Assembly (NCBI GenBank): GCA_973895155.1
Contig: OZ316897.1
Span: 1,018,515 to 1,082,514 of the forward strand
Source: Marsupella aquatica
Lineage: Eukaryota; Plantae; Marchantiophyta
Direction of reading: 5' to 3'
Length of the DNA: 64,000 nucleotides
Shown here: positions 23,939 through 50,840 of the stretch, one piece after another
How positions within the stretch are numbered: the stretch's first letter is position 1
Layout of the letters: each line of letters begins with the position of its first letter
The notes under the pieces: generated by a model
Told to the model about the DNA's origin: nothing
Databases searched by the model: none
What the model saw: the letters and a program-made list of their open reading frames with translations, nothing else
Translations under genes and position numbers: made by a program

Positions 23939-24324
23939 TCTCCCACCTCCTCTCTCAGCATCTGATAGGCTCTCTTGTTTGAGATTCTGAACACCCTTAG
24001 AGCTGCTGGGTTGTCAGTGTCGTATGCTAACAAAAGCAAATATCATCAAATATATGCTAAAAACTCGGTGTTTGTTCCCGTGGAAGAACAGGAATGGGAT
24101 GAAAAGATGTTTTAAAGTGTTTTGAGTGGTTTCAAGATGGTACTCAACATCTATAAGAAAAATAGGATCTTAAAACAAAACACAAGCAATTAATAAAAGA
24201 GGAACAAAAGTGACATTTGCTGAATTATAAGAGAATCTTAGAGCTTTTAGAGGTATAGTTTAGCAATATTTAACTCCGTCACCATGTCTTAAGAAAGAGC
24301 TATGGCATTATTTGAGACGTTGAT

Positions 24325-25499: not shown

Positions 25500-25503
25500 C
25501 TTG

Positions 25504-25515
25504 TGGTATGAGAGC
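25504..25515 (+). promoter_or_regulatory. Primer binding site, tRNA-iMet type
   Basis: TGGTATGAGAGC, one mismatch from the canonical TGGTATCAGAGC, 4 nt after the LTR end. Confidence 0.8.
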
Positions 25516-25646
25516 GATTGCTGGCATAGACACCGGGCCGAGGTTGTGCTAAGTCGGAATCCAAAAATCTTAACGGATTTTTGCGGGGACTTAGCTCTTC
25601 AACACGCCCGGCGGGTCAACTGCGGGCAGATTTGGTCGCTGGGAAC

Positions 25647-28228: not shown

Positions 28229-31200
28229 TGTAGCAAGGTGATAAAGAGATAAATGATATTTACTCCCTAACAACTCGATTTTGTTCCCGTTAGGAGTGGA
28301 TAAGATCGAAAAGACCTAATTAACACAATTTGAGAAGTTTACACCAACATTCTTAGGTTGGAGAGATTTCTAATGATCTCCTTAACATAAGTGTTTAACC
28401 ACAAACTCAAGTGGGTAATCCTTAGGATTCACAGTGCAATAATAAAGACTAGAATTAACAAAGATTGAAACTAGAGAGAGAGTAGATAGGAGTTTTCAAA
28501 GTGCAAGGGAATTGAATTTCTTACCATCACCACTCCTTCAATAAGGACTATGGCCTAATTTAAGATTCAGAAATCAACATTTTCTATGCTTTTTGATTTC
28601 TCGTAGCAACTCTTTTCCATCTCTTGAATTTAGAAGACAACAATGTAAATCAACCCGGGACACTTTTCTGGTCTTGCTTAAGATGGTACTAGGATACTCG
28701 AATTGGTTTACTTCTCCTACTATCCTTAAGATTGCTTATTTGAGTTTCACGTAAATTCCAATTTCTCTTTGGTGAATCTTCTATATGAATTGGTCATAGA
28801 CCTTGCTGATCTTCCAATATCATCATAGGCACACACTAGTATTCATTGAATATTGCACAACAACTCAAAGGGTTGCTAATCTTGAAACTTCTCTTTACTT
28901 AACCATGGTAAAAAGAAGGGAAGAAAAGACATAGATTTCTCCAAAATCAAAATGGGGAAATCAAATGCATCTCTCTCTCGGTTGACTTTGGGTTCTCCTC
29001 CTTTTGTACTAAAAGTGGAGATTATGAAAAGACATGCCTCTTCAAAACCTAAGTCTAAAGAAATATGTAAATAAAAGTGAACTATCCTAGTCAAAAATGG
29101 AGTAGAGTCTCCAATGGATACATCAACAAAATACTGGAGTCTACTTACTCATATACTAATCTATATAGCTATTTCTAAGTCTAAACTAATGTGGCTCTAA
29201 CTCTCTAAATACAACTCTATTCTGGCCCGTATTCTGGTCCTAGCTTTTGGGAAGGAACCTCCTCAGGGTTAGCCATGGCAAGGGGTTCTGGTCGAAGGAA
29301 AACTCCCTGCTGGCCAGTGGTAAAAGGGATGGACGGGTCAATATCCATGTTCTCCTGATGGGCACTTGGGTCATGAGAATAAGTGTAAGAATGGGAGTGG
29401 AAGTGTGTACTGGGAGTGGGGAAACCAGGAGGGTTGAGGGGTGATGAGGGGCCAGTGGAATAGACTCCTTCATGAGGACTAGGAGAGAAAGATCTAATAG
29501 TAAAGGGAGGAATCTCAGTATCAGCTAATAGCTCCTCAGTAGTCAAATCACTCATCTCCCTTAAGGCTTCACAGGTCTTTGAGAGACCTGTAAGTGCATC
29601 ATCCACCTTGGTACTCACATCTACCACTAAATGGTTAATCTTGGAGAAAAGGATGGGTGTGGTGTTCTTGGCCAAATACTCATCATAAATTTGGGCTTTA
29701 AGAAGATCCAGAGAAGCTATCTTAGTCAAAGGCTCAATCAGATCCAAAGATTGAGTGATACTGAGTTGGAGAGTATGCTCAAGCTCATTCTTCTTCTTAC
29801 TCCTTTCCAACTGTTGTTTGAGTTCAGATACCTTCTTCTTGAGGAACTCATTCTCCTTCAATCTCCAACTTCCTCTTATCTGTGGCATCACTCATGGTGG
29901 AGATCTTCTCAAGAATCTGTCCTGGTTTTACTCCTAACTTCTGAGAAATGTCAGTGATGGCCTTCTCCATCACAGTGGTCTTCCTCTTCACTTTCTGGAA
30001 TGTGTCTGAGATGATCTGGAAATCAGCTAGGGTGTCTAGGGAGGCATGGCCGGGTGCATCCAGAAATTCAGCCGGGTCGACGAAGGCCGGGTCGGCAAAG
30101 TCCGGGTCGAGGTTCCGGGCAGCAGACCGGATCTTTCGAGGATTTGTCTCTGCTGGTTCCTCATCCTCACTGTCATCAGAGGTGGCCTGGGTGATATCTG
30201 GATCTGTCTCTCCATACTTTATGAAGTTGAACTTGGCCAATAGTAATTTCTTCTCGTCTCTAAACAAGACTCCTTCAAAGCTATATAGATGTGCCAGGTA
30301 GCAGGAGAGGGGAGTAGGACTCTTGTTGGACAGGTTCTGTACCAACTTCCTTATCAAATCAAAGATAAGCTTAGCCCAATTGACTTTTCTTTCTCCTTTG
30401 TAAGCAGCAACAATGGTAGAGCCAACTCCAACAGTAACTCTTCTTGGCTTCTCAGGGTACAGCAGGGGTAGCAGAAAGCTGAAGACTCGTCTCAGATCAG
30501 GATCCAAACACTTAGAAACATTGAACCCGTCCTTACTGTTGATGGCTCCTTTGAAGTAAGGAAGGATTAGGTTGACAGCTCTCCCCACTGGACCTTCTCC
30601 TTCATCTTCCAATACAAAAGCTCCTGCAATCATCATCTGAGTCCATCGCTCAGGTCGGCCTCTGGAGGTATCCTTAAACTCAGCCGGATACTCCTTGGAT
30701 TGGATCTCTCTGATCATATCTTCGCTCTGATAACTCCAGGGTAGCTCCATCAGAGACTCACAGCCCATCCTGAGCAAAGACTCCCTCAGTTTGACCTTCT
30801 CAGCTTCATTGTCCGGAATAGCTGGCCTCAAAATTTTCATGGCAATAGGGACCTCCTTTCTCTTTGATCGTCTCACAGGGGCTTTAACCAGAGTAGGTGC
30901 AGGTGATGTTGAGGTTGAATGCCCCTTAGAGACGCAAGAAGTGGACATTCCGGCTGGATCCGCCCCTTGCTCCATAGGATTTCCGGAAGCAACAAATTGA
31001 TTTCTGGTAAATGTTCTGCCTCCTCTACGGCAAGCTCTACAATGATGCGACTTCAGAATGTTCAATTGCTTCGGTGTCGATCACTGGTAGAAATGTCCGG
31101 GTCGACCTGGCCGCAGCATTTCTGATCAACTGAAAATCATTTCGGAAGAATTGCATCAAGATCTCGTCAACCACAATGCAGGGTCATCTAACGTGGGGAA

Positions 31201-31844
31201 AATCTGGACTCAATCGGGCCTGCAATGGTCATGTTCGGGTTGACCTGACCGCCCTTCTCACAACCGATGTATCCACGATCAGGATCTCAAACTTCCTGCC
31301 TTCACTTCCAGCGGTGGAGTAGGCATTCCCCTCACAACGAATCAGTCAGTACCCTCATATCCAGGCTCTCATCATGCAATGCAAGATTGGTCCTATAATC
31401 CGGACCCAAGATCCTCTACCAAAAGGGTAGAGCCTCCTCACTCTACTGCTTAAACAACCTAATGCGCTCGGGAGCTCAAAACCTACTAAGTTCGGCTTTG
31501 AGAGGTGTGAGAGGCCGGATCGACTCTCCTTCCTTATATTCGGATTCTGCTGTGGTCGTGCCTGTGTTCGACTTATGGTTTTAAAAACTTTGGCAATGGA
31601 CAGCTGTTGTTTAGTAGAGTCTCGGTATAAGCTTTATATCTCATTCAAGGCTTATAGTAAAAAGTTCCGGGTCGATCCTCCTTCTCTAATATCAATCCGG
31701 GTTGACCTCAGATCAGCTTGAAAGTCTCATAACACTTCAAAGTAGTTTTTAGGTCCCTCTTCAGCCTTATTTGAGATCTTAAACGTAAAAGTTCTAAAAT
31801 TTATGGTTAGTTAACCCTTCTTTTACAAACATCCTTATCTCACA
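28229..31844. mobile_element. Element A: 3616-bp TGT..ACA element with 5-bp TSD; solo-LTR-like and ORF-bearing
   Basis: TSD TGTTG at 28224-28228 and 31845-31849; removal restores RT IFHDLL|DQGVVVFIDD. No RT/integrase motifs, internal LTR pair or long TIR seen. Confidence 0.9.
29217..30975 (-). pseudogene. Element A protein: ~190-aa conserved domain, coiled coil and Pro/Ser tail; one frameshift near 29860
   Basis: ORFs 29848-31065 and 29217-29891 overlap across a frameshift (KRKLE.. / LKENEFLKKKVSELKQQLE). The core is homologous to the element B ORF. Start codon uncertain. Confidence 0.7.
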
Positions 31845-34577
31845 TGTTGGACCAAGGAGTGGTTGTCTTTATTGATGACATCCTAATCTACTCGAAAACG
31901 TTGGAGGAACATGAGCAGTTGCTCAAAGAAGTGTTCTCTCACCTTCGCAAGGCTCGTCTCTTTGCTAAACCTAGCAAGTGCGAGTTTGCAATGAACGAGA
32001 TTCAGTTCCTCGGCCATACCTTTACCCCGGAAGGGATTACGCCTAGTCAGGACAAGCTTAAGGAGATCAAAGAATGGGAGCGCCCGTCCAATGTAAGGCA
32101 AGTTAGAGCCTTCTTAGGATTTACGGGGTTCTATCGGAGATACATGAAAGACTATGCAAGGATCGCGAGGCCCCTAAACGCGCTAACGTTGAAAAACAAA
32201 GTGTTTGTGTGGACACAAGATTACGAGTTAGCATTCCTAGAGCTCAAGCGGTTAATGATAATGCCGTCGATTCTAAAGTTACCTGAGATGGGGAAGCCGT
32301 TCAAGATTTGGACAGACGCAAGTGATTATGCCATTGGCGCCTGTCTTCACCAAGATGGGCGTCCTGTGGCCTTCGAGTCATGTAAGTTGGAAAATCATTG
32401 GATCACACCGGAAAGGGAAATGTATGCTGTGATCTACGCGTTAAAGAAGTCAGTGGGAGATTTACCTTAAGAACGGTCCCAAAGTGGTAATCCACACAGA
32501 TAGCTCGCCGACCGGGTATTTCAGTTCTAAGCCAAGACTAAACCCTAAGGAAATGCGCTAGCAGATGTTCTTGGCGGATTTCAATTTCGAAGTCTGCCAC
32601 GTTCTAGGGAAGACGAATACGACAGCTGACGCGTTATCACGTAAGGACCAACATCGTGTCAATGGGATCATGATGCTCGAATCCGAGTGGCCAAAGGTGC
32701 TGGCCGCAACGTATGGGGATGACAGGTTAGCTAAGGAATGGCAAAGCAATGGGAGTAGCCAAGGCAGGGTAAGGCACGTATCATTGGGGTTGGATACGAC
32801 GCATAACGTTTAGTTATGGCGATACAAGCAGAGGCGTGTGTACATACCTGAGTCTCTCAGGTTAGAGGTTCTACAAAAGTACCACGACTTGCCCTGGGGA
32901 GGGCATGGAGGACAAGCCGCTACATATCGCAGCATCTCGCGAGATGTGTATTGGCCGGACATGAAGCAATCGGTCCTTCAACACGTGCAAAGTTGTTACT
33001 CGTGCCAAAAGAACCAAACGGTCTATAGGGCAAAAGGAGGACTGCTGCAACCCTTACCAGTAGCTGCGGCTCCATGGGAGTCTATCTCCATGAACTTCAT
33101 TGTTGGGTTACCTGAGTCCCACTTTTTCCAAGATGGCGTATTTCTTGCCTACTACGAAGATGGTTTCGGCCCGAGAGGTTGCCGGTCTAGTGTTTGACAA
33201 TGTCTTCCGACAATGGGGATTGTCATTGCATATCGTGTCCGATCGCGATACCAAGTTCACAGGCCATTTCTGGAAGGCGTTGTTCCGGTTATCCGGAATG
33301 GACCTGACTAGGGGATCAACGTATCATCATGAGACAGATGGATAAAATGGAACGGGTTAATGGTAGATCGTGGAGGACTACTTACGTCACTTTGTGATGG
33401 CCAATCAAAAGGATTGGGCAAAGCATTTAACAATAGCCGAGTTTAGGTATAACTCGACCAAGCATTCGGCGACAGGTTTGCGCCGTTTGTGTTGGCCACA
33501 GGGAGGACGCCAAGGGCGCCCTCCTGGTTTATAAATCCGGAAGCTTGGCGGACGGAAAGCAAGGTTCCTTTTGCGGACAATTTTATTCGAGAGCGGCGCC
33601 TAGTTGTGGAAGCGGCTACCAAGGGTATGACCCTTGCCCAAAGTTGGTACAAGGAGCAAGGGGATAAATATCGACGCCAGGTAAGCTTTGAAATTGGGGA
33701 GAGCGTCTGGTTGCAGTTGAGACTTGAACAATACCACGGGAACATAAGTAGGAAGCTGGCTCCCAGATATGCGGGGCCCTATCGCATCATACGATGGGCC
33801 CACAAGGATAATCCGGTTTTGGTGGTGTTGGAGACACGTACCCAAGGAAATGGGCGTGGGCAAAAGCTACCATGTTAGCCGACTCAAGAATTTTGTCAAA
33901 GACAATGATCCCAACCGGGATCAGGACTTGCGTTCGGACGCCATGCTGGTGGAGGACGCTGAGGAGTTTGAGGTGGAGGCAATTCTGGACCACCGTTACA
34001 AACGTAAGTTGGGAAGGCAAATCTTAGAGTATTTGGTGAAGTGGGCTGGCTATGATCAGGCCGAGAGTACTTGGGAACCGGAAGAAAATTTGGGTATTGC
34101 CTCAGAGATCCTTGGAAGCTATCGTAAGCGAAGCGGCCTACCGCCGTTGTGAACTGGTACAGGCAGCTGTAGCTACCTTTGTGAGTTGTATCCTAGTTTC
34201 ACTCCTCTCGGCCTCTTAAGGATAAAGTCGGATTGCGTTGGGGCTAGAGGTTGTTGGGCGGCCAATTTGCTTTTTGCGAGTGGAAGCTGACGGTGCCCGC
34301 CTTACATCTGTGGGCGGGCTGGTTCGAACCAAAGGGGAGTTCCCCAAGGAAAGGACAATGGGTCCGACAAGTTTGGAGTTAGCTTACCCGATTGGACTGA
34401 CATCCTACTTGGATAAGTGGGATAGGTTGGAATTTCCTAAGTCTGGAAGGCGCATACCAACCTGGTTTGCATCAGCCTTATGGGCAAACCATTTGTTACC
34501 TCATAAAAATTTTAAGGCCCAAAGTGGTCTAGGCGTGTTGGAACGTTTACTGAGGTCACGCGGACGTGACCATTTTT

Positions 34578-38136: not shown

Positions 38137-41100
38137 AGCTCAGAAAATCTGAGAAAGCTCGAGAGCTCTCCTCCTAAAAACGGTTAAGCGTCGAGGCTCA
38201 AGAATGAAATCTCAGGGATCTAAGGTAGTTGTGCTGTTGTGAAAGAAGAAATGAACTAAAAAGAGATAGAAATGAAGGAGTTCTGATCAGGCAAAGCTCT
38301 CAAAATTGCAATTTCTTCAATTTCAAGAAATCAGAGAGCATCGATGACCCAATACTCCTCAATGTCTTATCAATGGCAGTTCAGAATTGGGGTGAACATT
38401 CTCTAGGCAGTTGCGCTACTATAGCAAGTGGAATGAGATCGAATGGAGGTCTAACAAGAGAGCACTAAGGATCAAAGCTCGCGCCCTACTGCCGGCCTCC
38501 ATGGACGTCCCTCGAAGAAAAGAAAAAATGATCAGGCCGGCGCGGACGTCAAATTAGGTCGTGGCGGGGTGGACGTCCCGGACGTCCCTACGTAGAGGCC
38601 GTCCAAGACGTCCTCGAGTTTTTCATGCGGGCCAGCGCGGAAAGAGTCGGCCGTCCTTGGCAAAAAATGGTTGCCATCCCGGCCGTCCCTGTGTGGAAGC
38701 CGTCCAAGCCGGCGCCGTCTTTGTCGTCTTTGTGAGGAAGTCATCCAGGACGGTTGCCGTCCTGGCCGTCCCTGTGTAGAGGCCGTCCAAGCCGGCACCT
38801 CATTTTTGAATCTTCTTTCAACTTCTTGCCGTCTTGACGCTTACTATGTGAAAACCAGGGTGGCCTTGACGTCTTCCAATGGTATCCTTACCCATTTGAG
38901 CTTAAACTAACTTAATTTTGCTTAAAGGGCTTATAAAAACTTAAAATTTAAAAATTTTATGATTTTGATACTTTAACTCTCCTTTTGGAATAATCACCTA
39001 ATTATAGTCAGCCCAGCACCAGCTCTCGCCATCCATTCCTTTTGCTTGACCATAAATCTTGCGTGCTCCTAATGCCCAACCACAAAGGACAGTCACTGAT
39101 TCCCTATCGCAAGTGCTCCACGCCTGCGTACCCTTTAAACACCGGAGCACATCACCAATCGCCCATCTACCAGGTATCCTCTCTGAGGGACAGAAAATCA
39201 GATTGGTTCTCAGCAATTCCCAGGCCTTCCAGAGATCCCCCGTATATGCCATTCCGTGGAGTGCCCCGGGGCAGCCCAGTACCATCTTGTCACGGAAGGT
39301 ATATCCATTCCTCCCGCCATTCCTCCGCACCACTTTATAGTTAGTCCAACCAATCCGATTAAGATTTTCTGCAAACATTCTGGCCCATTCCGTATCCGGG
39401 TAATCCATTGCACAGGTAAACCATTTTGATAACAGCGCATCCGAGTGACTTTGGAAATCCTTGAACCCCAGTCCGCCATCCATCTTGGGACGTGAAAGAC
39501 GTGCCCAGGAAACAAGCAAAACTCGCTTACCCCCTTCATTGTTATAGCCCCATAAAAAATCCCTGCACAATGCAGTCATTTTCCTAGCCAAACCAGCGGA
39601 CGCTTTTAAAAACATTATATGATAAATTGGAATTGCTTGAAGAATGTGCCTAATCAGAAGAGAACGTCCCTTAAAAGTAAGCATTTTGTTTGACCAAGAA
39701 GATAGCCTCTTCCCAATTTTATCAAGACAAAAACTATGCAGTTGTTCAGTTCTCAAATCCACCCCTAGAGGTGCACCCAGATATTTCTGTAACTCTCCTT
39801 TCTTACTAATCACACATCCAGTGGCTCTCAACCATACTGGAATGCTCATCATTGCTAGCGGGATAACAATAGATTTACGCAGATTCAATCTTGCCCCCGT
39901 GGCCAATTCATAACACTGTAGCACCGCTGTTGCTTTCAGAAAACTCCTCTCCTTAGCCAGGATAAACATCCCCAAGTCATCAGCAACAAATCTATAGCAT
40001 ATCCTCAAGTCTGCCGAGACTTGAATGCCCTCTAAATGCCCAGCCTCAATCTCAGCATCCATAAAATCCATTAAAGGCTGAGTTGATATCACAAATAGGA
40101 GAGGTGAAAGAGGGCAGCCCTGCCTAACTCCCTTCAATAGTCCAATCTCAGAGGAAAGCAGCCCATTCACATAAATGCGTGAAGATGCCTCTTGTAATAG
40201 CGCCTTGACTAGTTTTATGAACGTTCCACTTATCCCCAGCAAGTGCATGGTTTCCCAAATATAGCTCTGATCCACCCTGTCAAACGCCTTCTCAAAGTCT
40301 AGCTTAAGGAAAAGTGATTCAACCTTCCTGTTTTTCACCCAGTCAAACTGAGAGTCAAACATTAGCCAAGCCAACAAAATGTTCTCCACGAGGTTCTCCA
40401 GTATATTTCTCCCAGGGATGAACCCTGTTTGTTGAGGACTAATAATCCTTGGTAGGATTCGAATTAGCCTTAATGCCAGTAGCTTTGCAATCAGCTTGTA
40501 TACTGTGTTCAGCATAGTAAGAGGCCGTCAATCCCTAAGATACTGCTTATCCGGTTTCTTTGGAATAAACTTAATCATCCCCTCTTTAATCCCTGCAGCT
40601 AAGTTCCCTGTTAGCCAAAATTCTTGCACCATTGCTACCAGGTCGTCCTGCATGAACACCCAGCAGGCCTGGTAAACCTCTGTTGTCATCCCATCTGGTC
40701 CTGGGGCCTTATCTCTGGGTAGCATCCACAAGACTTCTTTGATTTCTTCTTTTGTTGGCAGCCCTTCCAACATTTGCATTTCCGTAATTGTCAACACACA
40801 CCTTGTGTGCGCCAGCAATCTGCTACGCTCATTCAACAATTCCATCCGTTCCCGCCTAGATGGCTCCTTAGGCGCATATAACTCCTTACATGTCTTCTCT
40901 ACTTCTCCCAATATCATCATTGGATCTGTGATCACCCTGCCATTGTCCACCGTGAGGCTCCTCATTGCCTCCCGTTCTCTTTTCGCCTTTACAGTTGCGA
41001 AATAAAATCTCGAAGGTTCCTCCCCCTCACCCAACCATTTAATTCGTGCTAACCTTCGTCCTCTGTGTGCCTCCTCCAGTTCTGCAGCATGTACTTGATC

Positions 41101-42846
41101 TTCCATATCGATGTAGTCTCTCAACTCCTCGTCTATGTATTCATCCAGAATCTCCATTTTCAACACACGAAGCTGATTTCTTAAAAGTAGCATTTCTCCC
41201 TCTTTCTCTTTAGGCATCGCTTGCTTCTCAATGTATTTACTCCTCATATTCCTGCAGGCCTTGTCAAAGGCAAGAATAGGTTCAGTACAGTCACCCTTTC
41301 CCTCCGCCCATGCCGCTCCTAGTGCTTCGACCATGCCCTCCATCCTTACCAGGGCTGGATTGGCCTTAAACAAAGATCTTCTCAGTCCCAATTTTCCCTC
41401 CTGCCTTCCTTCCATTAAACTAATGCAAATCATAACCAGGTCATGATCAGACAATGCCGATCCCCCGTCATGCACCAAATCAACCAGTTGATATATCCAG
41501 TCACCGTTCGCACTAAGATAAAACCGATCCAATTATCTCGATTGGACCAAAGACCCCATCCTGCTCCTTCTCCAGGTGTAGCGCGCCCCCCGTACCTCCC
41601 CCTTGATCAGCAAAGCATCCACCAGATTGAATCTAACTTTCAGAAATCGCCAGAACTCTGCTTCTCTTCCCTTAATCACGGGCGAATCACCATTGGAGTC
41701 CTCCCTTATGTTAAAGTCCCTGCATACAATCCAGTTCTCCTGAGGCAGATGCATTTTAAGCTCATGCCACAAAATGGCTCTAAGGCGAGCAGAATTCGGT
41801 GCGTAAACACTCAGGATACCGAATTTACAGTCCGGATACTCTACGATCGCCCATACTGCTCGCCCCCTATCCACCAGCCCGGAACCCTTCCCTTTTATAC
41901 CTTCAGATAATGAATGAATACTGGTAGGGACCAAAATTTCTGGACAAGTTTCTAGAAAACTCATCAATGACTCTGAAGTGAGTCCAACAAGACCCATAGA
42001 GGCATGGCTGTGTGATAGCTCACTCTAGTGGAAAATAGCTCACTTGAGTGGAAATTAGGTCTTGGGTTCAAATATTATGACTGACTGTTCCATTTAGGTG
42101 GGGTTTCATAGATTTTCCCTTGAAAAGAAAATGTGAGTCCACCAAGGACCCACTTCCTCTCCCAAACACATGCTCCCAAAATCCCAAAGTTCTCCAAATA
42201 AATGCACAAGTTTGCCAAAAATGAAGGTGCCTGGAAAACATATTCAAGACTTCCTCAGCAAAAGTGAAACATCTTGGCCTCCAAAAGCAGTCATCACTCT
42301 TCCCTGGTAAAAATTGACTGATGACTTTATGCAGTCCATGGGGATGAGCCAAACAAATCCCTCAGGCCATAGCTTAATACTTGCATGGCACAAGAGCCCA
42401 TTTTCAAAGCTTTCATCACAGCTAGTACAGTTGAGCAATTTCACTTTGCATATCTTGTTTCCAGTTTTTAGTCTGCAGGTGATAGCAAGCTAGGAGGGAG
42501 TCTCAAACCTTCAGGTCTGCAAAAAGATCCCTCGTCCAAAAATACCAGTTTCTAGTCTAAGGTCACAAGTGTGTAGACAAGCTTTTTGCTTTTTTGTGTC
42601 CACCATAATTTTGGTTAAGGGAAAATGACCTTGACCTTGACCGGAGGCAAAAGGGACACGTTTGAGGTGCCCTACTAGTAAAGAGAAGAAAACATTGCCA
42701 GGAAAAATGCAATGTTGCATCACAATCAGAGACATGAAAAAACTCGCTCTCTTACTCAATTGTGTCAATAAAGTGTTCTCATTTCAGAAAGTGATCTGTA
42801 TCTTTAACTCGAATAATCCAGACACAGATAATTTCCTAACCTTTTA

Positions 42847-43140: not shown

Positions 43141-46100
43141 CTAAGAGCGAGTCGAAATTGCTTCAGATAAAAACTGCGTGAGCATGGTGTAGGATCGTGA
43201 CTGTTTAGTCCCTGGTTTACAAACCGTAAAATGACCTGAATCCATAATAGTGTAGTAATTGTCCACGTCAAATCGAGCCGATGCCTCTGGAACCACTCGG
43301 CCAATAAACCTCTGCAATGAATAATGACAGAAAAAAGGTCAGTGTGTGCTAGCCAGCTGCTCTACGACGTCAAGATTCTGGGTTGGTTAAAAATTGCCAA
43401 AACCAAAATGGCTCTAGATATATCATGGGTTTGCTTTGGCGATGAAGGTACTTCGACTTGATGCCTCAGCTGAAAATGATACTGGAAATTCAATTATATA
43501 ATGATTGTGCGGGACTTACCCCACACTTCGTGTCAAGACCCTCCGCCACCGCTGCCGTCCGTACTAATCTCCGCTGCATTCTAAACTCTTCACTGATTCT
43601 CGCCCTCTCCTTATCTATCGTTTTCAGAAGTTCTAGGATTGGACTTCTACTTGGGAGAGAACTTGCAAGATCCCCTGTCCTAGAAAAACTATGTGGGGTT
43701 GCAAAGTAGAAAACTCCTGCAAAGTTGTTCAGAAAACACATAATTCTGCTAATGGTCCCAGTGTCTCGGCCAGGGTCCATCAGAGCTCTCTGTATGATAG
43801 CCGATAGAATAAATTGCTTGAGGAGAATTCCTCCCAGGCAATGACCTACAAGGTAAACCGGGCAATTCTGGCCTATATTGCACATTCTGTCTAGTATGAT
43901 ATCCGAGACCAACATTTCCGCTGCTAAATATGCGTCAATTGCACCTGTTGCACTCACGGATAGTATCCGTGCATCAGGAAAGTCTTGGGGGATCCAATCT
44001 CTGGGCCAAATTATTTGTGTCTCATTTGGCGGGGATCTGACCGTCCAAGTCTTCCAAAATGCATTTTGAAAATCATCCGGTTGAAGACCGTGAAAAAATA
44101 TTATTTCCATCTTCGGGATCCCCTGTGGAGAGTAAAATTCCCAGACAGAGTCGTTGAGCTGCGGAGACAGTGAAAAGACAGCATTGATTCAGACGTGTTA
44201 ATGACAAATTTCGACGTCAAACTCGTTCAAAATTCGTGTCAAATTTGGTCGGATGCGAAGAAGAGTGGCACGCCGGGGAACAGTAGAGGAATTAATGGAT
44301 GCAGAATTTTTTGGTGAAGCACTGGAATGTTTAATCAGCCAATTTCTGCTTCACATTAAGTTTTAAGGGAGGGCATGTTTAGAGGTGCAAGTCTGATGTA
44401 GCGAAGTGAACATCCACGAAGCTGGAAACATCACTAACCTGTCTTATATCGGGCGGCGGGTCCACGTTGGGCCGAATCCCTGAAGTTCGCAACTTGGGCC
44501 AAAGTCGTGACATCTGCAGATCACATTAATCAAACATTCTTATATATCTGAGATGACACTCGACGTGGAACAGGAATAGATAGATAGCGTGAACCTGATC
44601 CGTTAAGTTCAGTGGCCAATTTCGGGAAGCTAGGGAAAATACTTCATGCACTTACAACCTTAAGCACCTACAGAAAAGTATGACAAATCAGTTTCCACTT
44701 TCAGAGCAAGCACATAAATCGAAGGCAGGAAATATATCTGAGATGACACTCGACGTAGCAAATCCAATCGAGCACTTTCAAGGATCACTAACCTGGGTGA
44801 TACCCGGAGGTCGGTGAGCCTGCAGGCAGGCCTGCAATTTCGTCGTGAAGCTCAGGGCGAGGTCCACGGTTCCTGCCGCCTGCAGATCCAATTCCCGGGG
44901 CAATTAGTGTCTCCAATTAAGCATTCAATATCTCAAATTTCAGTCAGGGGAAGCAGATGAGAAAGTCTGGGATTTAGTGGAGGGCACGCCGGGGAAACAA
45001 CAGACGAATCAAAGGATGCAGAATTTTCAGTGAAGCACCGAAACGTATAATCAGCCAATTTCCGCTTCAAATTAATTTTTTGAGGGAGGATCTGTTTAGA
45101 GACGCAAGTCTGATGTAGCAGTCAACACCCACAACGCTGGAGCGAACACTAACCTGTGGTATACACGATATCGGGTTCATGTCGGGTTCATGTCGGGTTC
45201 GCAACTTAGACCACCATGATCTTGACACCTGCAGATCCCATTCAAGCATTCGTCAGTGATTCCTATTTAACTGCTCGATACCGCGAACCTGATCCATTAA
45301 GTTCAGTGACAAAGTCCTTGATACGGAGAAGAGTGGCACACCGGGGAACAACAGAGGAATTAACGGACGCATAAGTTCTTTGTGAAGCACCGAAATGTAT
45401 AATCAGCCAATTTCTGCTTCAAATTAAGTTAATTTGAGGAAGGATATGTTTAGAGACGCAAGCGAAGTGAACAACCACGACGCTGGAATGCTCGACCAAA
45501 CTAAGTTCATCGATTACTAACCTGTCTTATACCGGGTGGCGAGTTCACATCGGGCAGAATCTCTGCTGTTTGCAACTCGGGCCGGAGTCTTGACACCTGC
45601 AGATCACATTAATCATGCATTTATATACGGATTCCTGTTTAATTTCTTGATAGCGCGAACCTGATCCATTAAGTTCAGTGGCCAATTTCGGGACCGAAAA
45701 TACTTCATCACTTACAACCTTAAGCAACTACAGAAAACATGACAAATCAGTTTCAACTTTCAGATCACGGAGATAAACTTGAAGGCGGGGATATATCTGA
45801 GGGGACACTAGACGTAGAAACGTGAACAACATGACGCGAATCCAGTCGAGCATTTTCAGAACTCACTAACCTCGGTTTTCCGGCGCGATAATTGGCTGAG
45901 CTCCACGGTTCCTGCCACCTGCATATCAAATTCCCGGGGCAATTAGTGTGTACAATTAAGGATCCATACTCAAAAATGTCACTGAGGGGAAGCAGACGAA
46001 CATGTCTGGGATTTAGTGGAGCATTTATGTCTACGGTACAGTCCCCAAAACTATAAAATGCCTAGAGATTCATTGCATCCAGTCCTGAATAATCGTCATG

Positions 46101-49053
46101 CAAGATCAACCCAATTCCTCACCTCATAATCCTGAGCAAGATCCTCGTGCGCCTGTTGATTTTGGGTTTCCAAACGTTCTCTGACTAAATAAAAGACCTT
46201 TCTCTCCACCTCCTTGACGCCATATCTTTCCAGTTCTGCGTTTGTCCCATACGGCCGTGTCAATCCCCCACTCTCGTTCTCGAACAATAAGTGTTTGCTT
46301 TGTACAGTAGCGGCACGTCCATATATCTCCCCAAGTTGCTGTAGAATCTCCTTCCACATTTTGGTATTTGCTGGCAAAAAATGATCATTGTACCACTCGT
46401 CACTTACCTTTGACTGCAAAGCCAGTTTCAGATAACACCGGCGGATATGACAGAATTGGTCTCCTAGCATGGTGGTATGCCGTCGTACCCCCAACTTTTC
46501 TCTAAGCTTGCCGTTCGCACTATGTTCATCTGCAGGTTTCTGCAAATGCTTCCGTACCAACATTAGACAAGGTCGGCTGTGTCCCGACTTGGATTCTTTA
46601 GACTGCGCAAAACAGCCTCCACGCGGAAGAAATTTGCTGATCCCCCTCATCAGAATAGTATGCACCATGTCTTCCTTATGATGTCTACGGCGAATTCCGA
46701 GGAGCCTGAGGCAGAAGCTAACTGCAAGCGAGCCACAGACAGCACTGCCAATGCTGGTGGTGGTTGCCATATTGCCATACAAATCTTGTACTAGTGTGAG
46801 TGACGAAAACCCAGCAGCAGCAAATGCTCCCAAAACGCATATGATCGAACAGACAAACATGAAGGCAGTGAATACCAGCCACCTTCGAAGGCTCTCAACC
46901 GAATCTTCAATATATACATTGGCCTGTGGTAGGACAGCTTCAGCACCAGCTATTACAGTGCCGATGGCACAAAAGAAGGACAAGCTGTTGAATGTCCAAA
47001 ATATACGCAGCTTGGTATGTGTTGACTCGTGCCCATCACCCAAGGGGAGTTGCAGCCATCCTCCAAATGTTACACTTGCTATGACCGCAGCACCTACTAA
47101 AATTGCATTGGCTGCATCAACATAAACTTGTCTATCTCTATACAATCTCTCCACTCTATCCTTCACTTCTGGGACAGACTCCAACAGGTCCTGCATATCC
47201 CTCTTTCTCTCTTGACTTAAAGCTTCTGCCAGTTTGTGAGGATGCTGCCCGTCAGCGCTCTGGGCCAACATTCGGATCCCCTTCGATTTTGCTTCCGGAG
47301 AGAGCAAAGATCTGACCATTTCAGTCGCCCCTACAAACACTGCCCAATGTAAAGGAGTGAATGCACAACAATCCTCTGTGTTCACTACTAATTGTTTACT
47401 CTTGAGCAGCTCTAGAAGAACTGGAACTTTATCACTTTCACTATCACTATCACTACAGGCCATTTGCAAGGCCGTGCGCTTGAAAATGTCAAAGTCATTG
47501 ACATGAAAATTAAAAAAAGCCCACTTCATTAAACGATTCACAACTAAAGGGTGATTCCCCAAGACCGCATGATGCAATGGGGTCATCTTGAAGGTATCAC
47601 GAAGACTGTCTCTAAGGACAGTTTCTATTGTTTTCTGACTTGACTTACCTTTAAACTCTATTACCCATCCTTCAGGAAAAGTTTTACTCACCAAATCATA
47701 AGATATAGTGAGGTCGTCCAACACTGCGTGATCACCTAGAGCTGCCGCCAGGTGAACTGCTGTCCAACCGCTATTGCGTATAATCTCGTCAGTGATTTCA
47801 GGACAGAGATAGGAAGCAGGAACTCTGCAAGAAAGGTTGTATACAGAACACACTTGCCAGAAGTGCTCACTATGCGCAATTTCAGGAATGTTTTGATCAT
47901 GAACATCCTTAATCACTTGCTCAACTATCACGATTATTTTCTGTAGAGTTGCAGAACGTTCCTCGGGAGTGTCGCTACTGGCACAATTGTGCAAGACCTC
48001 TCCTGCCACCCATTTTGTCGGACCTGGAGAGTAGGAGTGATGATACCTGGACCATGCTTTCATATTAGTTAAATCTGTGAGGCGGTCTGGTTTCCACAAA
48101 TTGAAGCTCTGGATGATGTCAGACCGTCCAGAAGCACACGCCCAAGCCAAGACCACGGTCCACAAAAAGTTTTCAATCGCGGGAGTACTGCAGCCCGAAG
48201 TCTCAATGAAGCTCAGCGGGCTCTCTTTATCAACCATTTTGAAGCGTTTCGGCTGGGTCTTCAGGGGGCTCGCTTCATCAGGATCCTTGCCAATAGCTCC
48301 TTCAAAACATTTCAGAAACCTTTCAGCTTGTTTATATGCTGTAGGGTTTGGCAGAAAACACCACAGAAGAGCTCTTTTGATGCTCTCGAAGCAATCCCCA
48401 AAACTCCATGCGCCCTTAGGATCATTGCGGTACTTTTTAAGTCGGCGACATATGCCTGTCCCAACCAGGTTAGCATTTGTCCTGTGTTCACTTAACAGCG
48501 GCACTATCTCCGGCAGGCCACACAGTACGGCCCCGTGCAAAGCTCCTAATCGGTCGTTTATTACCCAGTCGGGTTCAAATTCATCCTTCTCTGCATCAAC
48601 ATAGTCAATGCCGTCAAGGAACAATTGTCTTTGAATAACGTCCGGAAAGTTCAGGATGAGGTAATTCCAAGTGAGAGACACAAATGCCGAGTCGATGGGT
48701 TGAGTCCCAGACTTATTCTTCGACGGGGACGAAAGCAACAAGTCTAGCCATACAAAACGAGGATGCTCGTAATTTGCCATGAACTTTTCCATTTCTTCAA
48801 CGTTATCCTCCATGCACATCACGCTTTTGAACTTGTTCCTGAACTCCTCGGCCCCCTTGCTCTTTTCCCGCTCGACGGGGACCTGGTCCAGTCGCTTCCG
48901 TAGCAGCTTCCGTCGCGCTGCTTGCTCTGATGAGTCCCCAGCTTCCTGGTTATTTTCTTCCTGCTGCCCAGCCTCATGTCGAGCTAATGGCTCCACTCCG
49001 TCAGCGTTCATTTGTTCATGTTCCCCTGGCTCGTCTCCAGTTGACTGCTGCAT
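43141..49053 (-). CDS. Ankyrin-repeat + PGG (4-TM) protein, predicted fused to a C-terminal alpha/beta-hydrolase (~1366 aa)
   Basis: Exons 49053-46123, 45918-45871, 45596-45522, 45228-45154, 44879-44793, 44513-44439, 44158-43520, 43311-43141; all GT-AG, phase 0 and stop-free. Ankyrin motifs WTAVHLAA, MTPLHHAV, RTALQMAC, FTPLHWAV. PGG motif RDRQVYVDAANAILVGAAVIASVTFGGWLQLPLG. Hydrolase motifs IIFFHGL, WPRDW, ARILSV, LVGHCLGG, FYFATPH, VVPEASAR, HFTVCKP. Both domains are well supported; the fusion depends on the inferred splicing. Confidence 0.75.
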
Positions 49054-50136
49054 TGCTTCGGCGTGTCTTTTTTCCTGATTCCTAGGCTCTTCTTCAGCTG
49101 ACCACTCCACGATTTTCCGCTAGTATGATTCCTGATACCCACGAATTTGTTGAGGTGACGCCTCCGGTACTGCTGCTTCTGAGTGAATTTCTTCCTGCTT
49201 GTCTCGAGCTGACGTCTCCCTTGCCATTACAGGAATACACTAAACTCGCCTCGATCGGCTCTCTTCTTCCTTACGTAAGCTTCCTGCTTCCATCTCTACT
49301 GGAGCTCGAGCTTCTTACGACTTCTGCAGCACGTCTTGAGCTTCTATAGGGTTTCTTACCAGTTTCCCTTGAATTGCTTGCCCCGACCTGACGACTCCAC
49401 TGACATTCTGTGAACACCGAGAACTCAAGCCTGCTTTCGGCTGTACTTCTGCCGCTCGTCCACTCTCATTCAATTCCTAAAATCCATCGGACCAACATCC
49501 GTGCAAAATCGATGTGAGCCCGAGCCGTTTCGAGAGGAAGCATGGTGAAGTCATATATGATCATTTATCTCTCCAAAGCGACTACACCAGGCCAGGCAGC
49601 TGTCATTTAGGACTTCACAAGACTGGTACATACAACACGACTGAAGGAAAGGAACTGCACTGCCGACGACACCAGCGTGGACGCATCCGATCATGAGCAG
49701 AACCTATCGAAGACCTCGAATGTGGTGAATCGAAACACACGTCAAAAGACTCGAGAGTTATCAAAGACTGTTATTCAGAGAACGAGTTAGAATACAGGAC
49801 AAAACAATCAAGCTACTGTAGTGCTCCCACAATCTTGATCATGAAAACAACCGATGAGAGTGTTGGAATTCAGTACAAAATAGATAAACCTCTCCCACTG
49901 TCACGCTGACTATAAATAAATCACTGATTAGAGTGATCCTTGGTGAGCAGAGATAGAGTGCAGATGTCATGTAGCACTGACTAATTGGCTGATCTAGAGC
50001 CATTTGGTCCATTTGGACTTTGGAGTGCCTCGTGACAAAGGATGTCAGATAACGCATTGAATACAGTACGACAGAATGAAAAGGAATCAGAATTCACTAC
50101 CGTAGTCCATTTGCTTTAGATAATTATATATGCTAA

Positions 50137-50160
50137 CTAGCCCAATGCAGTGCGTGCACG
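50137..50160 (-). mobile_element. Probable Helitron 3' terminus
   Basis: Minus strand reads CGTGCACGCACTGCATTGGGCTAG|T: a short GC hairpin, then CTAG, then host T. Base composition changes abruptly here and a repeat array begins. The 5' end was not located. Confidence 0.55.
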
Positions 50161-50840
50161 AAAGATGTCGAGGTGATAAAAAGATGTCCAGATGATAAAA
50201 AGATGTTGAGTGATAAAAAGATATCGGGTGATAAAAAAATGTCGAGGTGATAAAAAGATGTCCAGGTGATAAAAAGATGTCGAGTGACAAAACGATGTCA
50301 AGGTGATAAAAAGATGTCGAGATGATAAAAAGATGTCGGGGTGATACAAAGTTGTCGAGGTGATACAAAGATCAAGGTGATAAAAAGATGTTGATGTGAA
50401 AAAAAGATGTCAAAGAGAGAAAAAGATATTGAGTTGAGCAAAAGATGTCTAGATGAACAAAAGATGTTCATGAGAGAAAAGATGAGGAGGAGATAAAAAC
50501 ATTTTGAGATAAAAAAAAACATATGTCTAGGTGAGGCACAAATGTAAAGGTGATCAAAGATTTAGGGTTATATAATTGTTCATATAACCCTAAACTTTAA
50601 TGCCTGCGCACAGAAGATGTTGGGGTGAGGAAAAAATGTTGAGGTGATGACAATATCAAGGAGAGGGAAAGATGTCAAAGTGACACAAAGATGTCGAGAC
50701 GATGCAAAGAAATGTAGGCGAGCGTTGCACAAAAACTTTTGAGGCAAGGAAAAGATGTGAAAGCAAAGTCAAGGTGAGGAAAGTATGTTGAGGGATGAAA
50801 CAATTTTGAGGTGAGGAAAAGATGTCAAGGCAACGCAAAT
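50161..50840. repeat. Degenerating ~20-bp tandem array (AAAGATGTCGAGGTGATAAA)
   Basis: About 12 regular units at 50161-50400, with progressively more decayed units out to ~50840. Confidence 0.9.

What the first reader, a model, noticed from the sequence alone, without database searches (positions are those of the whole stretch)
43141..49053. Candidate new immune-receptor architecture: ACD6-like ankyrin-PGG membrane protein fused to an HNL-type alpha/beta-hydrolase
Seen: the 1004-aa ankyrin/PGG ORF has a phase-0 donor (GAG|GTGAGG at 46123/46122) 8 codons before its stop. Five phase-0 mini-exons follow, then two hydrolase exons (44158-43520, 43311-43141), giving one open ~1366-aa frame. The ORF track shows these as unrelated ORFs. 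Established: ankyrin+PGG proteins (ACD6/ITN1 family) are membrane immunity regulators with channel-like properties, and this SERAC1/PGAP1-like hydrolase type is the N-terminal signalling domain of bryophyte hydrolase-NBS-LRR receptors. Inference: here it sits at the C-terminus of a 4-TM protein with no NB-ARC or LRR, so sensor repeats, membrane domain and effector would be one chain with both ends cytosolic. I do not know this architecture from the literature.
Basis: partly seen in the sequence, partly recalled or inferred. Interest (0 to 1): 0.88.

Follow-up and report, generated by a model that had tools for sequence, protein, structure and literature searches.

The report
Ankyrin membrane gene joined to hydrolase
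In a liverwort genome, a gene for an ACD6-like ankyrin membrane protein is followed in the same reading frame by five duplicated mini-exons and an immune-type lipase-like hydrolase; sequence comparisons favour one spliced fusion protein of a kind not yet described, but no RNA data could be found to prove it.

Summary
On the minus strand lie a 1004-codon ankyrin+PGG ORF with four membrane helices, and a strong phase-0 donor (GAG|GTGAGG) eight codons before its stop. Five phase-0 mini-exons follow, then a two-exon alpha/beta-hydrolase. Counted from the ATG at 49053, the exon lengths sum to 1366 codons.

A second species (locus L001) has the same layout with three mini-exons. All 9 coding indels between the two keep the frame, against 4 of 22 in the introns. 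The 8-codon tail after the donor is frameshifted in L001.

The hydrolase is homologous to the hydrolase domain of liverwort hydrolase-NLRs. In Calypogeia fissa gene models the same cassette (linker mini-exon plus two hydrolase exons, same intron positions) follows other front ends: membrane anchors, malectin-LRR-TM, Roc-COR and lectin. A relative of the ankyrin-PGG protein carries an HMA domain at the same attachment point.

I put the fusion at about 0.6. No RNA run was available. An in-frame ATG two codons before the first mini-exon keeps a separate hydrolase gene possible. No protein with this architecture appeared in the searches. The scan had already noted the mini-exon array on this same stretch. 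Verdict: new variant of known kinds.

The parts
46123..49053 (-). Single large exon: acidic N-terminus, about 450 aa with no Pfam match (ankyrin-like in places), ankyrin repeats (about aa 450-650 of the 1004-aa ORF), PGG domain with four membrane helices (about aa 662-805), and a 190-aa cytosolic tail. It ends at the phase-0 donor GAG|GTGAGG. The ORF is open from 49110 (GTG); the first ATG is at 49053.
   Evidence: Ank_2 3e-15, PGG 2.2e-7; hydropathy, charge flanks; dN/dS 0.57 overall, 0.24 in PGG/TM against L001.
45919..46122 (-). Proposed intron 1 (204 nt). It includes the 8-codon read-through tail and the TGA (46098-46096). Its 3' ~100 nt are a copy of the intron sequence in front of mini-exon 4.
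   Evidence: family D2: 45898-46021 matches 44859-44982, 84%. (86% identity to L001, three 1-nt indels, one directly after the donor that shifts the tail frame). (1-nt insertion behind 46112 in an organism B contig). (GC 0.42 and T 0.32, like the other introns; five out-of-frame ATGs; no AATAAA-type signal).
45871..45918 (-). Mini-exon 1: 16 codons, phase 0-0, an A-type unit shortened by an in-frame loss. An in-frame ATG lies two codons upstream at 45924-45922, inside the acceptor (gatATGcag|).
   Evidence: orthologous exon in L001.
45522..45596 (-). Mini-exon 2: 25 codons, phase 0-0, B-type, ending ..PPGIRQ.
45154..45228 (-). Mini-exon 3: 25 codons, phase 0-0, B-type.
44793..44879 (-). Mini-exon 4: 29 codons, phase 0-0, A-type, ending ..PPGITQ.
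   Evidence: 6-nt in-frame indel against L001.
44439..44513 (-). Mini-exon 5: 25 codons, phase 0-0, B-type, ending ..PPPDIRQ. It is the ancestral linker exon directly in front of the hydrolase.
   Evidence: 3-nt in-frame indel against L001. (the same P-x-x-I-T/R-K/Q | LND junction and intron position in Calypogeia fissa gene models).
43520..44158 (-). Hydrolase exon 1: 213 codons. It holds the HG oxyanion motif (IIFFHG), the nucleophile elbow GHCLGG (Cys) and a TPH motif.
   Evidence: Abhydrolase_6 4.9e-4, below cut-off. (719 homologues; 272 at E<=1e-10). (alignment). (three indels against L001, all multiples of 3; 3.7% chance of staying open after 102 random substitutions).
43141..43311 (-). 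Hydrolase exon 2: 56 codons plus TAG. It holds the conserved ..EASARFD.. segment and the His motif (DSGHFTVCK).
   Evidence: colinear with the C-termini of homologues. (same intron position in C. fissa P0011).
44159..45870 (-). Tandem array of a roughly 350-370-nt unit (mini-exon plus intron), five copies, with a higher-order repeat of about 1060 nt. It is not found elsewhere in the window.
   Evidence: L001 has three units.

Best explanation
One gene of eight exons encodes a membrane protein of about 1366 residues. Its parts, in order, are cytosolic ankyrin repeats, a four-helix PGG membrane domain, a cytosolic tail, a roughly 120-residue proline-rich linker built from five tandemly duplicated phase-0 mini-exons, and a C-terminal alpha/beta-hydrolase of the liverwort hydrolase-NLR type with Cys at the nucleophile position.

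Origin (inferred): the cassette 'linker mini-exon + two hydrolase exons' normally sits behind a membrane anchor or a receptor-like front end in leafy liverworts. Here it was captured behind an intronless ankyrin-PGG exon through a phase-0 donor near that exon's end.

Mechanism (inferred): the ACD6/Lr14a-like membrane module multimerises in a membrane and holds several hydrolase domains at its cytosolic face on flexible tethers. The length of the tether can change by exon duplication, loss or skipping. Either the hydrolase is the output (a lipase-like, cell-death-promoting activity, as reported for Marchantia NLR hydrolase domains), or it is a fast-evolving bait whose disturbance alters the channel-like module.

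Shown: the exons, their frames and their conservation; the domain homologies; the cytosolic placement of both ends.

Not shown: the splice from the ankyrin-PGG exon to mini-exon 1, expression, catalysis, and any role in immunity.
For: 1. There is a strong phase-0 donor, GAG|GTGAGG, eight codons before the stop. The chance expectation is about 0.14%. It is identical in the orthologous locus L001.
2. Coding constraint stops at that donor. Across 2046 aligned nt of the upstream ORF, all four indels against L001 are multiples of 3. The 8-codon tail has a 1-nt indel directly after the donor in L001 and another 1-nt insertion in an organism B contig.
3. The roughly 100 nt in front of mini-exon 1 copy the intron end in front of mini-exon 4, acceptor included. 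Mini-exon 1 therefore looks like an internal exon that needs an upstream donor.
4. Only 171 nt lie between the TGA and the alternative ATG. They have intron-like composition, five out-of-frame ATGs and no AATAAA-type signal.
5. The mini-exons and hydrolase exon 1 are kept in frame. All five of their indels are multiples of 3, against 4 of 22 in introns (Fisher p=0.0016; all coding 9/9, p=3.5e-5). The chance of hydrolase exon 1 staying open under random substitution is 3.7%.
6. In C. fissa gene models the linker mini-exon is internal and follows an anchor exon. The intron positions are identical. The same linker-plus-hydrolase cassette follows TM anchors, malectin-LRR-TM, LRR-Roc-COR and a PP2 lectin.
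7. A relative of the ankyrin-PGG protein (P0002, 45% identity) carries an HMA domain at the same point of the tail.
8. Four TM helices with positive flanks place the C-terminus in the cytosol. The TM-anchored relatives also have positive residues after their anchor.
9. Marchantia NLR hydrolase domains gave HR-like cell death in N. benthamiana (PMC11218826). ACD6 and Lr14a stimulate Ca2+ influx (bioRxiv 10.1101/2021.01.25.428077; 10.1101/2024.12.10.627212, abstract).
Against: - There is no RNA evidence. The four runs that hold the stretch gave contiguous genomic-type contigs without joints.
- An in-frame ATG lies two codons upstream of mini-exon 1 in both species, so a separate soluble hydrolase protein is possible. 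Soluble relatives exist (P0164, P0019).
- No protein with Ank+PGG+hydrolase was found. It is absent from the 10 ankyrin-PGG relatives and from those of the top 150 hydrolase relatives that were checked.
- The layout is seen only in the window, the closely related L001 species (about 9-19% DNA divergence) and organism B.
- The hydrolase evolves at dN/dS about 1. It has lost the conserved YNSSA stretch and changed TPHxGS to TPHSFS, which could mean relaxed constraint.
- In the two C. fissa models the anchor-to-linker intron is phase 1, not phase 0.
Confidence: 0.6

Rival explanations
1. There are two adjacent genes. The ankyrin-PGG gene ends at the TGA at 46096. A separate gene starts at the ATG at 45924, two codons before mini-exon 1, and encodes a soluble protein of about 390 residues: a repeated linker plus the hydrolase. 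The donor at 46122 is not used.
For: - The in-frame ATG inside the first acceptor (gatATGcag|) is present in the window and in L001, whereas the other units have gatCTGcag.
- Soluble stand-alone relatives exist (P0164, P0019, P0016).
- No annotated protein combines Ank/PGG with this hydrolase.
- Protein tails often tolerate frameshifts.
Against: - Only 171 nt would have to hold the upstream gene's 3' end plus a promoter and a 5' UTR.
- That stretch has five out-of-frame ATGs and no AATAAA-type signal.
- Half of it is a copy of an internal intron end.
- A consensus phase-0 donor at the ORF end is unlikely by chance, about 0.14%.
- In the C. fissa models the linker mini-exon is never the first exon.
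Confidence: 0.25
2. The hydrolase part is a decaying remnant. Either the ankyrin-PGG gene is the only functional gene here and the mini-exon/hydrolase stretch drifts neutrally, or the whole locus is silent among retroelements.
For: - dN/dS is 1.07 in hydrolase exon 1 and about 2.4 in the mini-exons.
- Substitution rates in these exons are higher than in the introns (JC 0.185-0.20 against 0.107).
- Motifs are degenerate relative to the family consensus.
- The locus is flanked by LINE and Ty3 fragments.
Against: - There is no stop or frameshift in 389 codons in the window, nor in the 291 codons seen in L001.
- All five indels are multiples of 3, against 18% of the intron indels.
- The chance of no stop under random substitution is 3.7%.
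- Core motifs are unchanged between the species and the changes cluster in loops: IIFFHGLQPDDF, NCPVYLVGHCLGG and the FAGVFY..ATPH segment.
- Splice sites are intact at every exon in both species.
Confidence: 0.08
3. This is a nested or alternatively started gene. The hydrolase gene keeps an ancestral membrane-anchor first exon somewhere upstream of 49110 and splices across the ankyrin-PGG ORF, or it uses several promoters, so that fused and unfused forms coexist.
For: - Relatives start with a short anchor exon followed by the linker mini-exon.
- Alternative first exons are common.
Against: - tblastn with nine anchor-bearing N-termini found nothing upstream; matches begin only at 44161-44155, at the start of hydrolase exon 1.
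- Such short hydrophobic exons are, however, hard to detect this way.
- This reading does not explain the in-frame consensus donor at the ORF end.
Confidence: 0.05

Closest known systems
ANK-TM (ankyrin + PGG) proteins: Arabidopsis ACD6, BDA1 and ITN1; wheat Lr14a
   Same: - N-terminal cytosolic ankyrin repeats are followed by a PGG membrane domain (Pfam PF12796 and PF13962 above cut-off).
- Liverwort homologues exist in Marchantia, Riccia and Calypogeia.
- ACD6 and Lr14a stimulate Ca2+ influx and act in immunity (abstracts).
   Different: - The window protein has an extra ~450-aa N-terminal region and a ~190-aa cytosolic tail, shared only with P0001 and P0002.
- It has four hydrophobic helices; five are reported for ACD6.
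- If the splice is real, it has a C-terminal enzyme domain that no described ANK-TM protein has.
- Orthology to ACD6 was not tested.
Bryophyte hydrolase-NLRs (HNL, Xue et al. 2012, PMC3352924; Hyd-NLR, Chia et al. 2024, PMC11218826)
   Same: - The hydrolase domain is homologous. NB-ARC-LRR proteins with this domain are among the best hits (P0013 E 5e-75, P0042, P0022).
- The short motif before the domain (..G-x-x-K | L/I-N/S-D-S-V-Y/W) is shared.
   Different: - The window gene has no NB-ARC and no LRR.
- The domain is C-terminal rather than N-terminal.
- The window copy has Cys at the nucleophile position, as about a third of relatives do.
Membrane-anchored and receptor-like hydrolases of Calypogeia fissa (P0011, P0015, P0018, P0168; malectin-LRR-TM-hydrolase P0089)
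   Same: - The cassette and exon structure are the same: a linker mini-exon ending P-x-x-I/V-T/R-K, then hydrolase exon 1 starting LND, then exon 2, with identical intron positions.
- The hydrolase sits just behind membrane helices on the side with positive charges.
- Protein identity is 50-54%.
   Different: - Their membrane part is a single helix or a receptor-like ectodomain plus one helix, not an ankyrin-PGG module.
- They have one linker exon rather than five.
- Their first intron is phase 1.
Ankyrin-PGG protein with a C-terminal HMA domain (P0002, locus L002)
   Same: - It is the closest full-length relative outside the L001 species: 45% identity over aa 79-965, with the same N-terminal region and tail.
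- An extra domain is attached at the end of the tail, at the point where the window has its donor.
   Different: - The added domain is HMA, not a hydrolase.
- It is encoded in one continuous ORF without introns.
Animal TRP 'chanzymes' (TRPM2 with a NUDT9-like hydrolase, TRPM6/7 with a kinase). This comparison is from my own knowledge.
   Same: The concept is the same: a multimeric cation-channel-type membrane protein with a cytosolic C-terminal enzyme domain. ACD6 ankyrin repeats resemble those of TRP channels.
   Different: - There is no homology in the membrane or enzyme parts.
- The ACD6 membrane helices do not model on TRP pores.
- This is an analogy only.
Fungal NLRs with lipase-like N-terminal domains (SesB-like; Dyrka et al. 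2014, PMC4986451, seen only as a title)
   Same: An alpha/beta-hydrolase of the DUF676/PGAP1 kind is used as a module of non-self-recognition proteins.
   Different: A different kingdom and an NLR context. The relationship to the window domain was not tested here.

Membership tests
ANK-TM / ankyrin-PGG family (ACD6, ITN1, Lr14a type) | Ankyrin repeats N-terminal to the membrane domain | tested here: met
   Pfam Ank_2 3e-15 (57 bits, cut-off 27.3); Ank, Ank_3, Ank_4 and Ank_5 are also above cut-off, around aa 503-607.
ANK-TM / ankyrin-PGG family (ACD6, ITN1, Lr14a type) | PGG domain (PF13962) with several membrane helices | tested here: met
   PGG 2.2e-7, 31.1 bits against cut-off 24.1, aa 665-766. 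Four hydrophobic peaks between aa 662 and 805.
ANK-TM / ankyrin-PGG family (ACD6, ITN1, Lr14a type) | Orthology to ACD6, or channel-like or immune function | not tested
   I built no phylogeny against angiosperm ANK-TM proteins. Function cannot be tested with these tools.
Bryophyte hydrolase-NLR (HNL / Hyd-NLR) | Alpha/beta-hydrolase domain of the HNL type | tested here: met
   phmmer of hydrolase exon 1 gave 719 hits, and NB-ARC-LRR proteins carrying the domain are near the top (P0013 5e-75, P0042 2e-31). Pfam on those proteins shows DUF676/PGAP1/Abhydrolase_6 plus NB-ARC plus LRR.
Bryophyte hydrolase-NLR (HNL / Hyd-NLR) | NB-ARC domain and LRRs in the same protein | tested here: not met
   Pfam finds no NB-ARC or LRR in any exon. 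The hydrolase ends at a TAG where homologues end. The downstream ORFs are a LINE reverse transcriptase. The gene is therefore not an HNL; it only shares the domain.
Catalytically competent alpha/beta-hydrolase | Nucleophile elbow G-x-Nuc-x-G with Ser (or Cys) | tested here: inconclusive
   The motif is GHCLGG with Cys, as in L001. Among 127 elbows of relatives the residue is S 69, C 42, G 9, D 7. A Cys can act as a nucleophile, but activity is untested.
Catalytically competent alpha/beta-hydrolase | Catalytic His and acid residue; alpha/beta fold | tested here: inconclusive
   His is present in exon 2 (DSGHF), aligned with the conserved His of relatives. The acid residue was not identified. 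The AlphaFold model of the relative P0164 (pLDDT 70.5) matches generic alpha/beta-hydrolases at TM 0.4-0.55. There is no PDB relative by sequence. The window's own two exons were not joined or folded.
Membrane-tethered hydrolase cassette of leafy liverworts | Linker mini-exon ending P-x-x-I/V-T/R-K/Q, spliced in phase 0 to an exon starting L/C-N-D, with a second intron before the ..VVEE.S.R.D segment | tested here: met
   The window junctions at 44439/44158 and 43520/43311 correspond to the junctions in C. fissa P0011 and P0018, mapped on L005 and L004. The motif is also present in P0089, P0166 and P0168.
Single fused transcript (the architecture claimed) | mRNA joining 46123 to 45918 | not testable with these tools
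No RNA run holds the stretch, and the four runs laid show no joints.

The most novel reading that the evidence does not exclude
Leafy liverworts have a family of ACD6-like ankyrin-PGG membrane proteins that carry exchangeable C-terminal 'integrated' domains: an NLR-type hydrolase here and an HMA domain in a relative. The conserved channel-like membrane module would be the executor. The fast-evolving C-terminal domain, on a tether whose length is set by duplicable or skippable phase-0 mini-exons, would be the bait or catalytic trigger. That would be an NLR-independent, chanzyme-like immune receptor class built by exon shuffling of the same cassette that hydrolase-NLRs use.
Probability: 0.3. Interest if true: 0.85.

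Novelty: new variant of a known kind. Interest (0 to 1): 0.62.

Why it matters
How ACD6-type ankyrin membrane proteins signal is still unclear, and so is what the hydrolase domain of bryophyte NLRs does.

A natural fusion of the two would act as a 'Rosetta stone'. It would suggest that both work in one pathway at a membrane, and that the hydrolase acts when held and clustered at the cytosolic membrane face. That reading fits its frequent membrane anchors in relatives.

The fusion would also make both questions testable. The fused protein or its halves could be expressed and assayed for cell death, Ca2+ flux and lipase activity.

Independently of the fusion, the data show three things:
- The hydrolase cassette is shuffled behind many receptor-like front ends in leafy liverworts.
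- This ankyrin-PGG subfamily accepts foreign C-terminal domains (HMA).
- A linker can grow by tandem duplication of symmetric mini-exons while staying in frame.

Tried and rejected
- RNA evidence. The look-up of sequencing runs listed only four runs of unknown kind. Laid on the stretch, they behaved as genomic DNA: contiguous across introns, with no joints. Expression and splicing therefore stay untested.
- Joined model. Every search used single exons by reference. The fold used a database relative (P0164) as a proxy.
- Fusion proteins in databases. The ankyrin-PGG ORF gave 10 hits over its whole length and only P0001 with its tail alone. None has a hydrolase.
- Hydrolase relatives. The C-terminal-hydrolase proteins among the top 150 relatives turned out to be NLR, Roc-COR, malectin-LRR, PP2 or metacaspase fusions, not ankyrin. 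Only 150 of the 719 hits could be seen.
- Metagenome scans with the tail and with hydrolase exon 1 found nothing.
- Locus L003 (P0003) has no hydrolase within about 1 kb downstream.
- An ancestral anchor exon upstream of the ankyrin ORF was not found. This is weak evidence because such exons are short.
- The mini-exon/intron unit is not a dispersed repeat in the window. Tandem Repeats Finder missed the array; the repeat finder showed it.
- A PDB sequence search found nothing. Foldseek gave only generic alpha/beta-hydrolases, so I make no specific enzyme assignment.
- My first intron alignments used gap penalties that were too lenient. I redid them.

Full report
**What is there.** On the minus strand the window holds a 1004-codon ORF (49110-46096; first ATG at 49053). 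Pfam finds ankyrin repeats (Ank_2 3e-15) and a PGG domain (2.2e-7), both above their curated cut-offs. Hydropathy gives four membrane helices between residues 662 and 805. Positively charged stretches lie before the first helix and after the last, so both ends should be cytosolic.

Eight codons before the stop lies GAG|GTGAGG (46123/46122). Downstream, a script confirmed the following exons:
- five mini-exons: 45918-45871, 45596-45522, 45228-45154, 44879-44793 and 44513-44439 (16, 25, 25, 29 and 25 codons);
- two hydrolase exons: 44158-43520 (213 codons) and 43311-43141 (56 codons plus TAG).

All exon lengths are multiples of three. All acceptors are ..cag| and all donors are |gttagt or |gtaagt. 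Every search below used single exons by reference. All seven introns have stops in every frame.

**The mini-exon array.** The region 44159-45870 is a tandem array of a 350-370-nt unit (exon plus intron) in five copies, with a higher-order period of about 1060 nt. It does not occur elsewhere in the window. The mini-exons are GC-rich (49-66%) and the introns AT-rich (40-45% GC). The proposed first intron (42% GC) matches the introns.

**A second species.** The best protein hit of the ankyrin-PGG ORF (P0001, 83% identity) lies on a 4.3-kb genomic contig, L001. L001 aligns colinearly with the window through the ORF, the donor, intron 1 and mini-exon 1. It then skips about 680 nt (two units) and continues to the end of hydrolase exon 1. 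It has three mini-exons of 29, 27 and 26 codons, all phase 0 with the same splice sites, and the same donor GAG|GTGAGG.

Indels against L001:

| Region | Indel lengths (nt) | Multiples of 3 |
|---|---|---|
| Ankyrin-PGG ORF | 27, 3, 3, 12 | 4 of 4 |
| Mini-exons | 6, 3 | 2 of 2 |
| Hydrolase exon 1 | 3, 9, 9 | 3 of 3 |
| Introns | 22 indels | 4 of 22 |

Fisher's test gives p=3.5e-5 for all coding indels against introns, and p=0.0016 for mini-exons plus hydrolase alone. After 102 random substitutions, hydrolase exon 1 would stay open only 3.7% of the time. The mini-exons and the hydrolase are therefore coding sequence kept open by selection, not chance ORFs.

**Rates of change against L001.**

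| Region | dN/dS | JC distance |
|---|---|---|
| Ankyrin-PGG ORF, overall | 0.57 | 0.09 |
| PGG/TM part | 0.24 | not computed |
| Tail | 0.66 | not computed |
| Hydrolase exon 1 | 1.07 | 0.185 |
| Three comparable mini-exons (68 codons) | about 2.4 | 0.20 |
| Introns | not applicable | 0.107 |

The exon-versus-intron differences are significant (p=1e-4 for the hydrolase exon and p=0.002 for the mini-exons). Core motifs are unchanged and the changes cluster in loops: IIFFHGLQPDDF, NCPVYLVGHCLGG and the FAGVFY..ATPH segment. This fits diversifying selection. Gene conversion from paralogues or partly relaxed constraint cannot be excluded with two sequences.

**What the hydrolase is.** Pfam on the window exon gives only a sub-threshold Abhydrolase_6 hit. 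A full HMMER scan of 1.84 billion representatives found 719 relatives, 272 of them at E<=1e-10. Named relatives come from liverworts: Calypogeia fissa, Marchantia paleacea and Riccia sorocarpa. Their Pfam hits are DUF676, PGAP1, Abhydrolase_6 and LCAT.

Many relatives are hydrolase-NB-ARC-LRR proteins (P0013, P0042, P0022, P0083, P0159). This is the HNL or Hyd-NLR class (PMC3352924; PMC11218826). The same domain also sits in other contexts:
- at the C-terminus of LRR-Roc-COR (P0110), malectin-LRR-TM (P0089) and PP2-lectin (P0145) proteins;
- before a metacaspase (P0014, P0020);
- behind a single N-terminal membrane helix (P0011, P0015, P0018, P0166, P0168).

An AlphaFold model of the relative P0164 (pLDDT 70.5) matches only generic alpha/beta-hydrolases, and no PDB relative is found by sequence.

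The nucleophile elbow of the window and of L001 is GHCLGG. Among 127 elbows of relatives the residue is Ser 69, Cys 42, Gly 9 and Asp 7. The His motif is present in exon 2. The acid residue was not identified. The window/L001 lineage lacks the conserved YNSSA stretch and has TPHSFS or TPHEFA where the family has TPHxGS.

**The cassette and its exon structure are ancestral.** In membrane-anchored and receptor-like relatives a short motif, P-x-x-I/V-T/R-K, directly precedes L-N-D-S-V-W/Y. This is exactly the junction between the window's mini-exon 5 (..PPPDIRQ) and hydrolase exon 1 (LNDSVWEFYSP).

Mapping two annotated C. fissa proteins onto their loci shows the following structure:
- an anchor exon;
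- a linker mini-exon of 10 or 25 codons, ending ..K|gttagt or ..R|gttcgt;
- hydrolase exon 1, starting cag|LND or cag|CND;
- hydrolase exon 2.

Both intron positions are identical to the window's. The first intron there is phase 1, whereas all the window's are phase 0. The window's linker exons therefore descend from an internal exon of a membrane-tethered hydrolase gene. They became symmetric and were duplicated.

**Is the ankyrin-PGG exon spliced to it?** This is the crux, and it is inferred, not shown.

Points for the splice:
- A consensus phase-0 donor within the last ten codons of an ORF is expected about 0.14% of the time.
- Frame constraint ends at the donor. L001 has a 1-nt indel immediately after GTGAGG, which gives a different tail and stop. 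An organism B contig has another 1-nt insertion behind 46112.
- The 100 nt before mini-exon 1 copy an internal intron end.
- Only 171 intron-like nucleotides separate the TGA from the only alternative start. They have five out-of-frame ATGs and no AATAAA-type signal.
- In relatives the linker exon is internal and the hydrolase is membrane-tethered on the cytosolic side. The four-helix PGG topology would provide that.
- The nearest other relative of the ankyrin-PGG protein (P0002) has an HMA domain appended at the same place in one continuous ORF.

Points against the splice:
- No RNA run was available. All four runs laid were genomic-type, without joints.
- An in-frame ATG sits two codons before mini-exon 1 in both species (gatATGcag|, where the other units have gatCTGcag).
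- Soluble relatives exist.
- No database protein shows the architecture.
- Two metagenome scans found nothing.
- A search for an upstream anchor exon also found nothing.

I put the fusion at about 0.6, two separate genes at about 0.25, and decay or a nested gene at about 0.13 together.

**How it most likely works (inference).** ACD6 sits in large complexes and stimulates Ca2+ influx. Lr14a is reported as a Ca2+-permeable channel (abstract). Two Marchantia NLR hydrolase domains gave HR-like cell death when expressed alone.

A multimeric ankyrin-PGG module would hold several hydrolase domains at the cytosolic membrane face on tethers of about 120 residues. It could activate them by proximity, as an NLR resistosome does for its N-terminal domains.

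The rate pattern (conserved membrane part, fast linker and hydrolase) and the HMA relative suggest the opposite division of labour just as well. In that reading the membrane module is the executor and the C-terminal domain is a variable bait or regulator. Animal TRP 'chanzymes' are an analogy for this, from my own knowledge. The symmetric mini-exons allow tether length to change by duplication, loss (five units against three between the species) or exon skipping.

**Comparison and novelty.** The gene is a member of the ankyrin-PGG architecture family. It shares the HNL hydrolase domain but is not an HNL, because it has no NB-ARC or LRR. It uses the membrane-tethered hydrolase cassette of leafy liverworts. 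The combination was not found in any search or paper consulted. I class it as a new variant of known kinds, conditional on the splice.

**Earlier notes of this scan.** They report the same mini-exon array on this stretch. Elsewhere in this genome they report membrane-anchored hydrolase-NLRs, a membrane-anchored tandem hydrolase and a Cys-elbow hydrolase-NLR. These agree with the picture of membrane-tethered hydrolases, but they are not independent evidence.

Noticed in passing
L002:2007-5333 (protein P0002): An intronless 1108-aa ankyrin-PGG ORF from another sample ends in an HMA (heavy-metal-associated) domain (Pfam 2.3e-5, aa 1049-1085). HMA is the classic integrated-decoy domain of angiosperm NLRs. 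It is attached where the window ORF has its donor.
   Followed up: partly
Proteins P0089, P0110, P0145 (Calypogeia fissa) and P0014, P0020 (P0014 from Marchantia paleacea): The same hydrolase cassette appears in several other architectures:
- at the C-terminus of a malectin-LRR-TM protein (a receptor-like 'hydrolase' in place of a kinase), an LRR-Roc-COR protein and a PP2 lectin;
- N-terminal to a metacaspase.

I found no paper describing these, but I did not search for them specifically.
   Followed up: partly
window 43520-45918 against L001: The mini-exons and hydrolase exon 1 diverge about twice as fast as the introns between them (JC 0.19-0.20 against 0.107). Both dN and dS are raised. This points to diversifying selection, gene conversion from paralogues or constrained introns; it is unresolved.
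   Followed up: partly
window 38998-41532, minus strand: Two long ORFs lie directly downstream of the hydrolase stop. One (38998-40515) has a reverse-transcriptase domain (RVT_1 3.5e-20). This looks like a LINE-type element on the same strand as the gene.
   Followed up: partly
window 23038-32470: There are retroelement fragments here: zf-RVT (23038-23691), a Ty3 capsid-like ORF (26259-26975), and RT plus RNase H (31844-32470). The gene sits in a transposon-rich stretch.
   Followed up: no
window 50087-50522, minus strand: Overlapping ORFs are made of a short repeated peptide theme (..FYHLDIFLSP..). It is a low-complexity tandem repeat just upstream of the ankyrin-PGG gene.
   Followed up: no
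window 47550-47586 and 48300-48500: In the laid runs, a 37-nt piece inside the ankyrin ORF also lies on an unrelated short contig. Word depth rises two- to three-fold around 48315-48513. This suggests short repeats or paralogous sequence inside the ORF.
   Followed up: no
window 46099-49110 (the ORF as a whole); L002: The roughly 3-kb ankyrin-PGG coding region is a single exon, both here and in the HMA-bearing relative. Whether this subfamily arose by retroposition was not examined.
   Followed up: no
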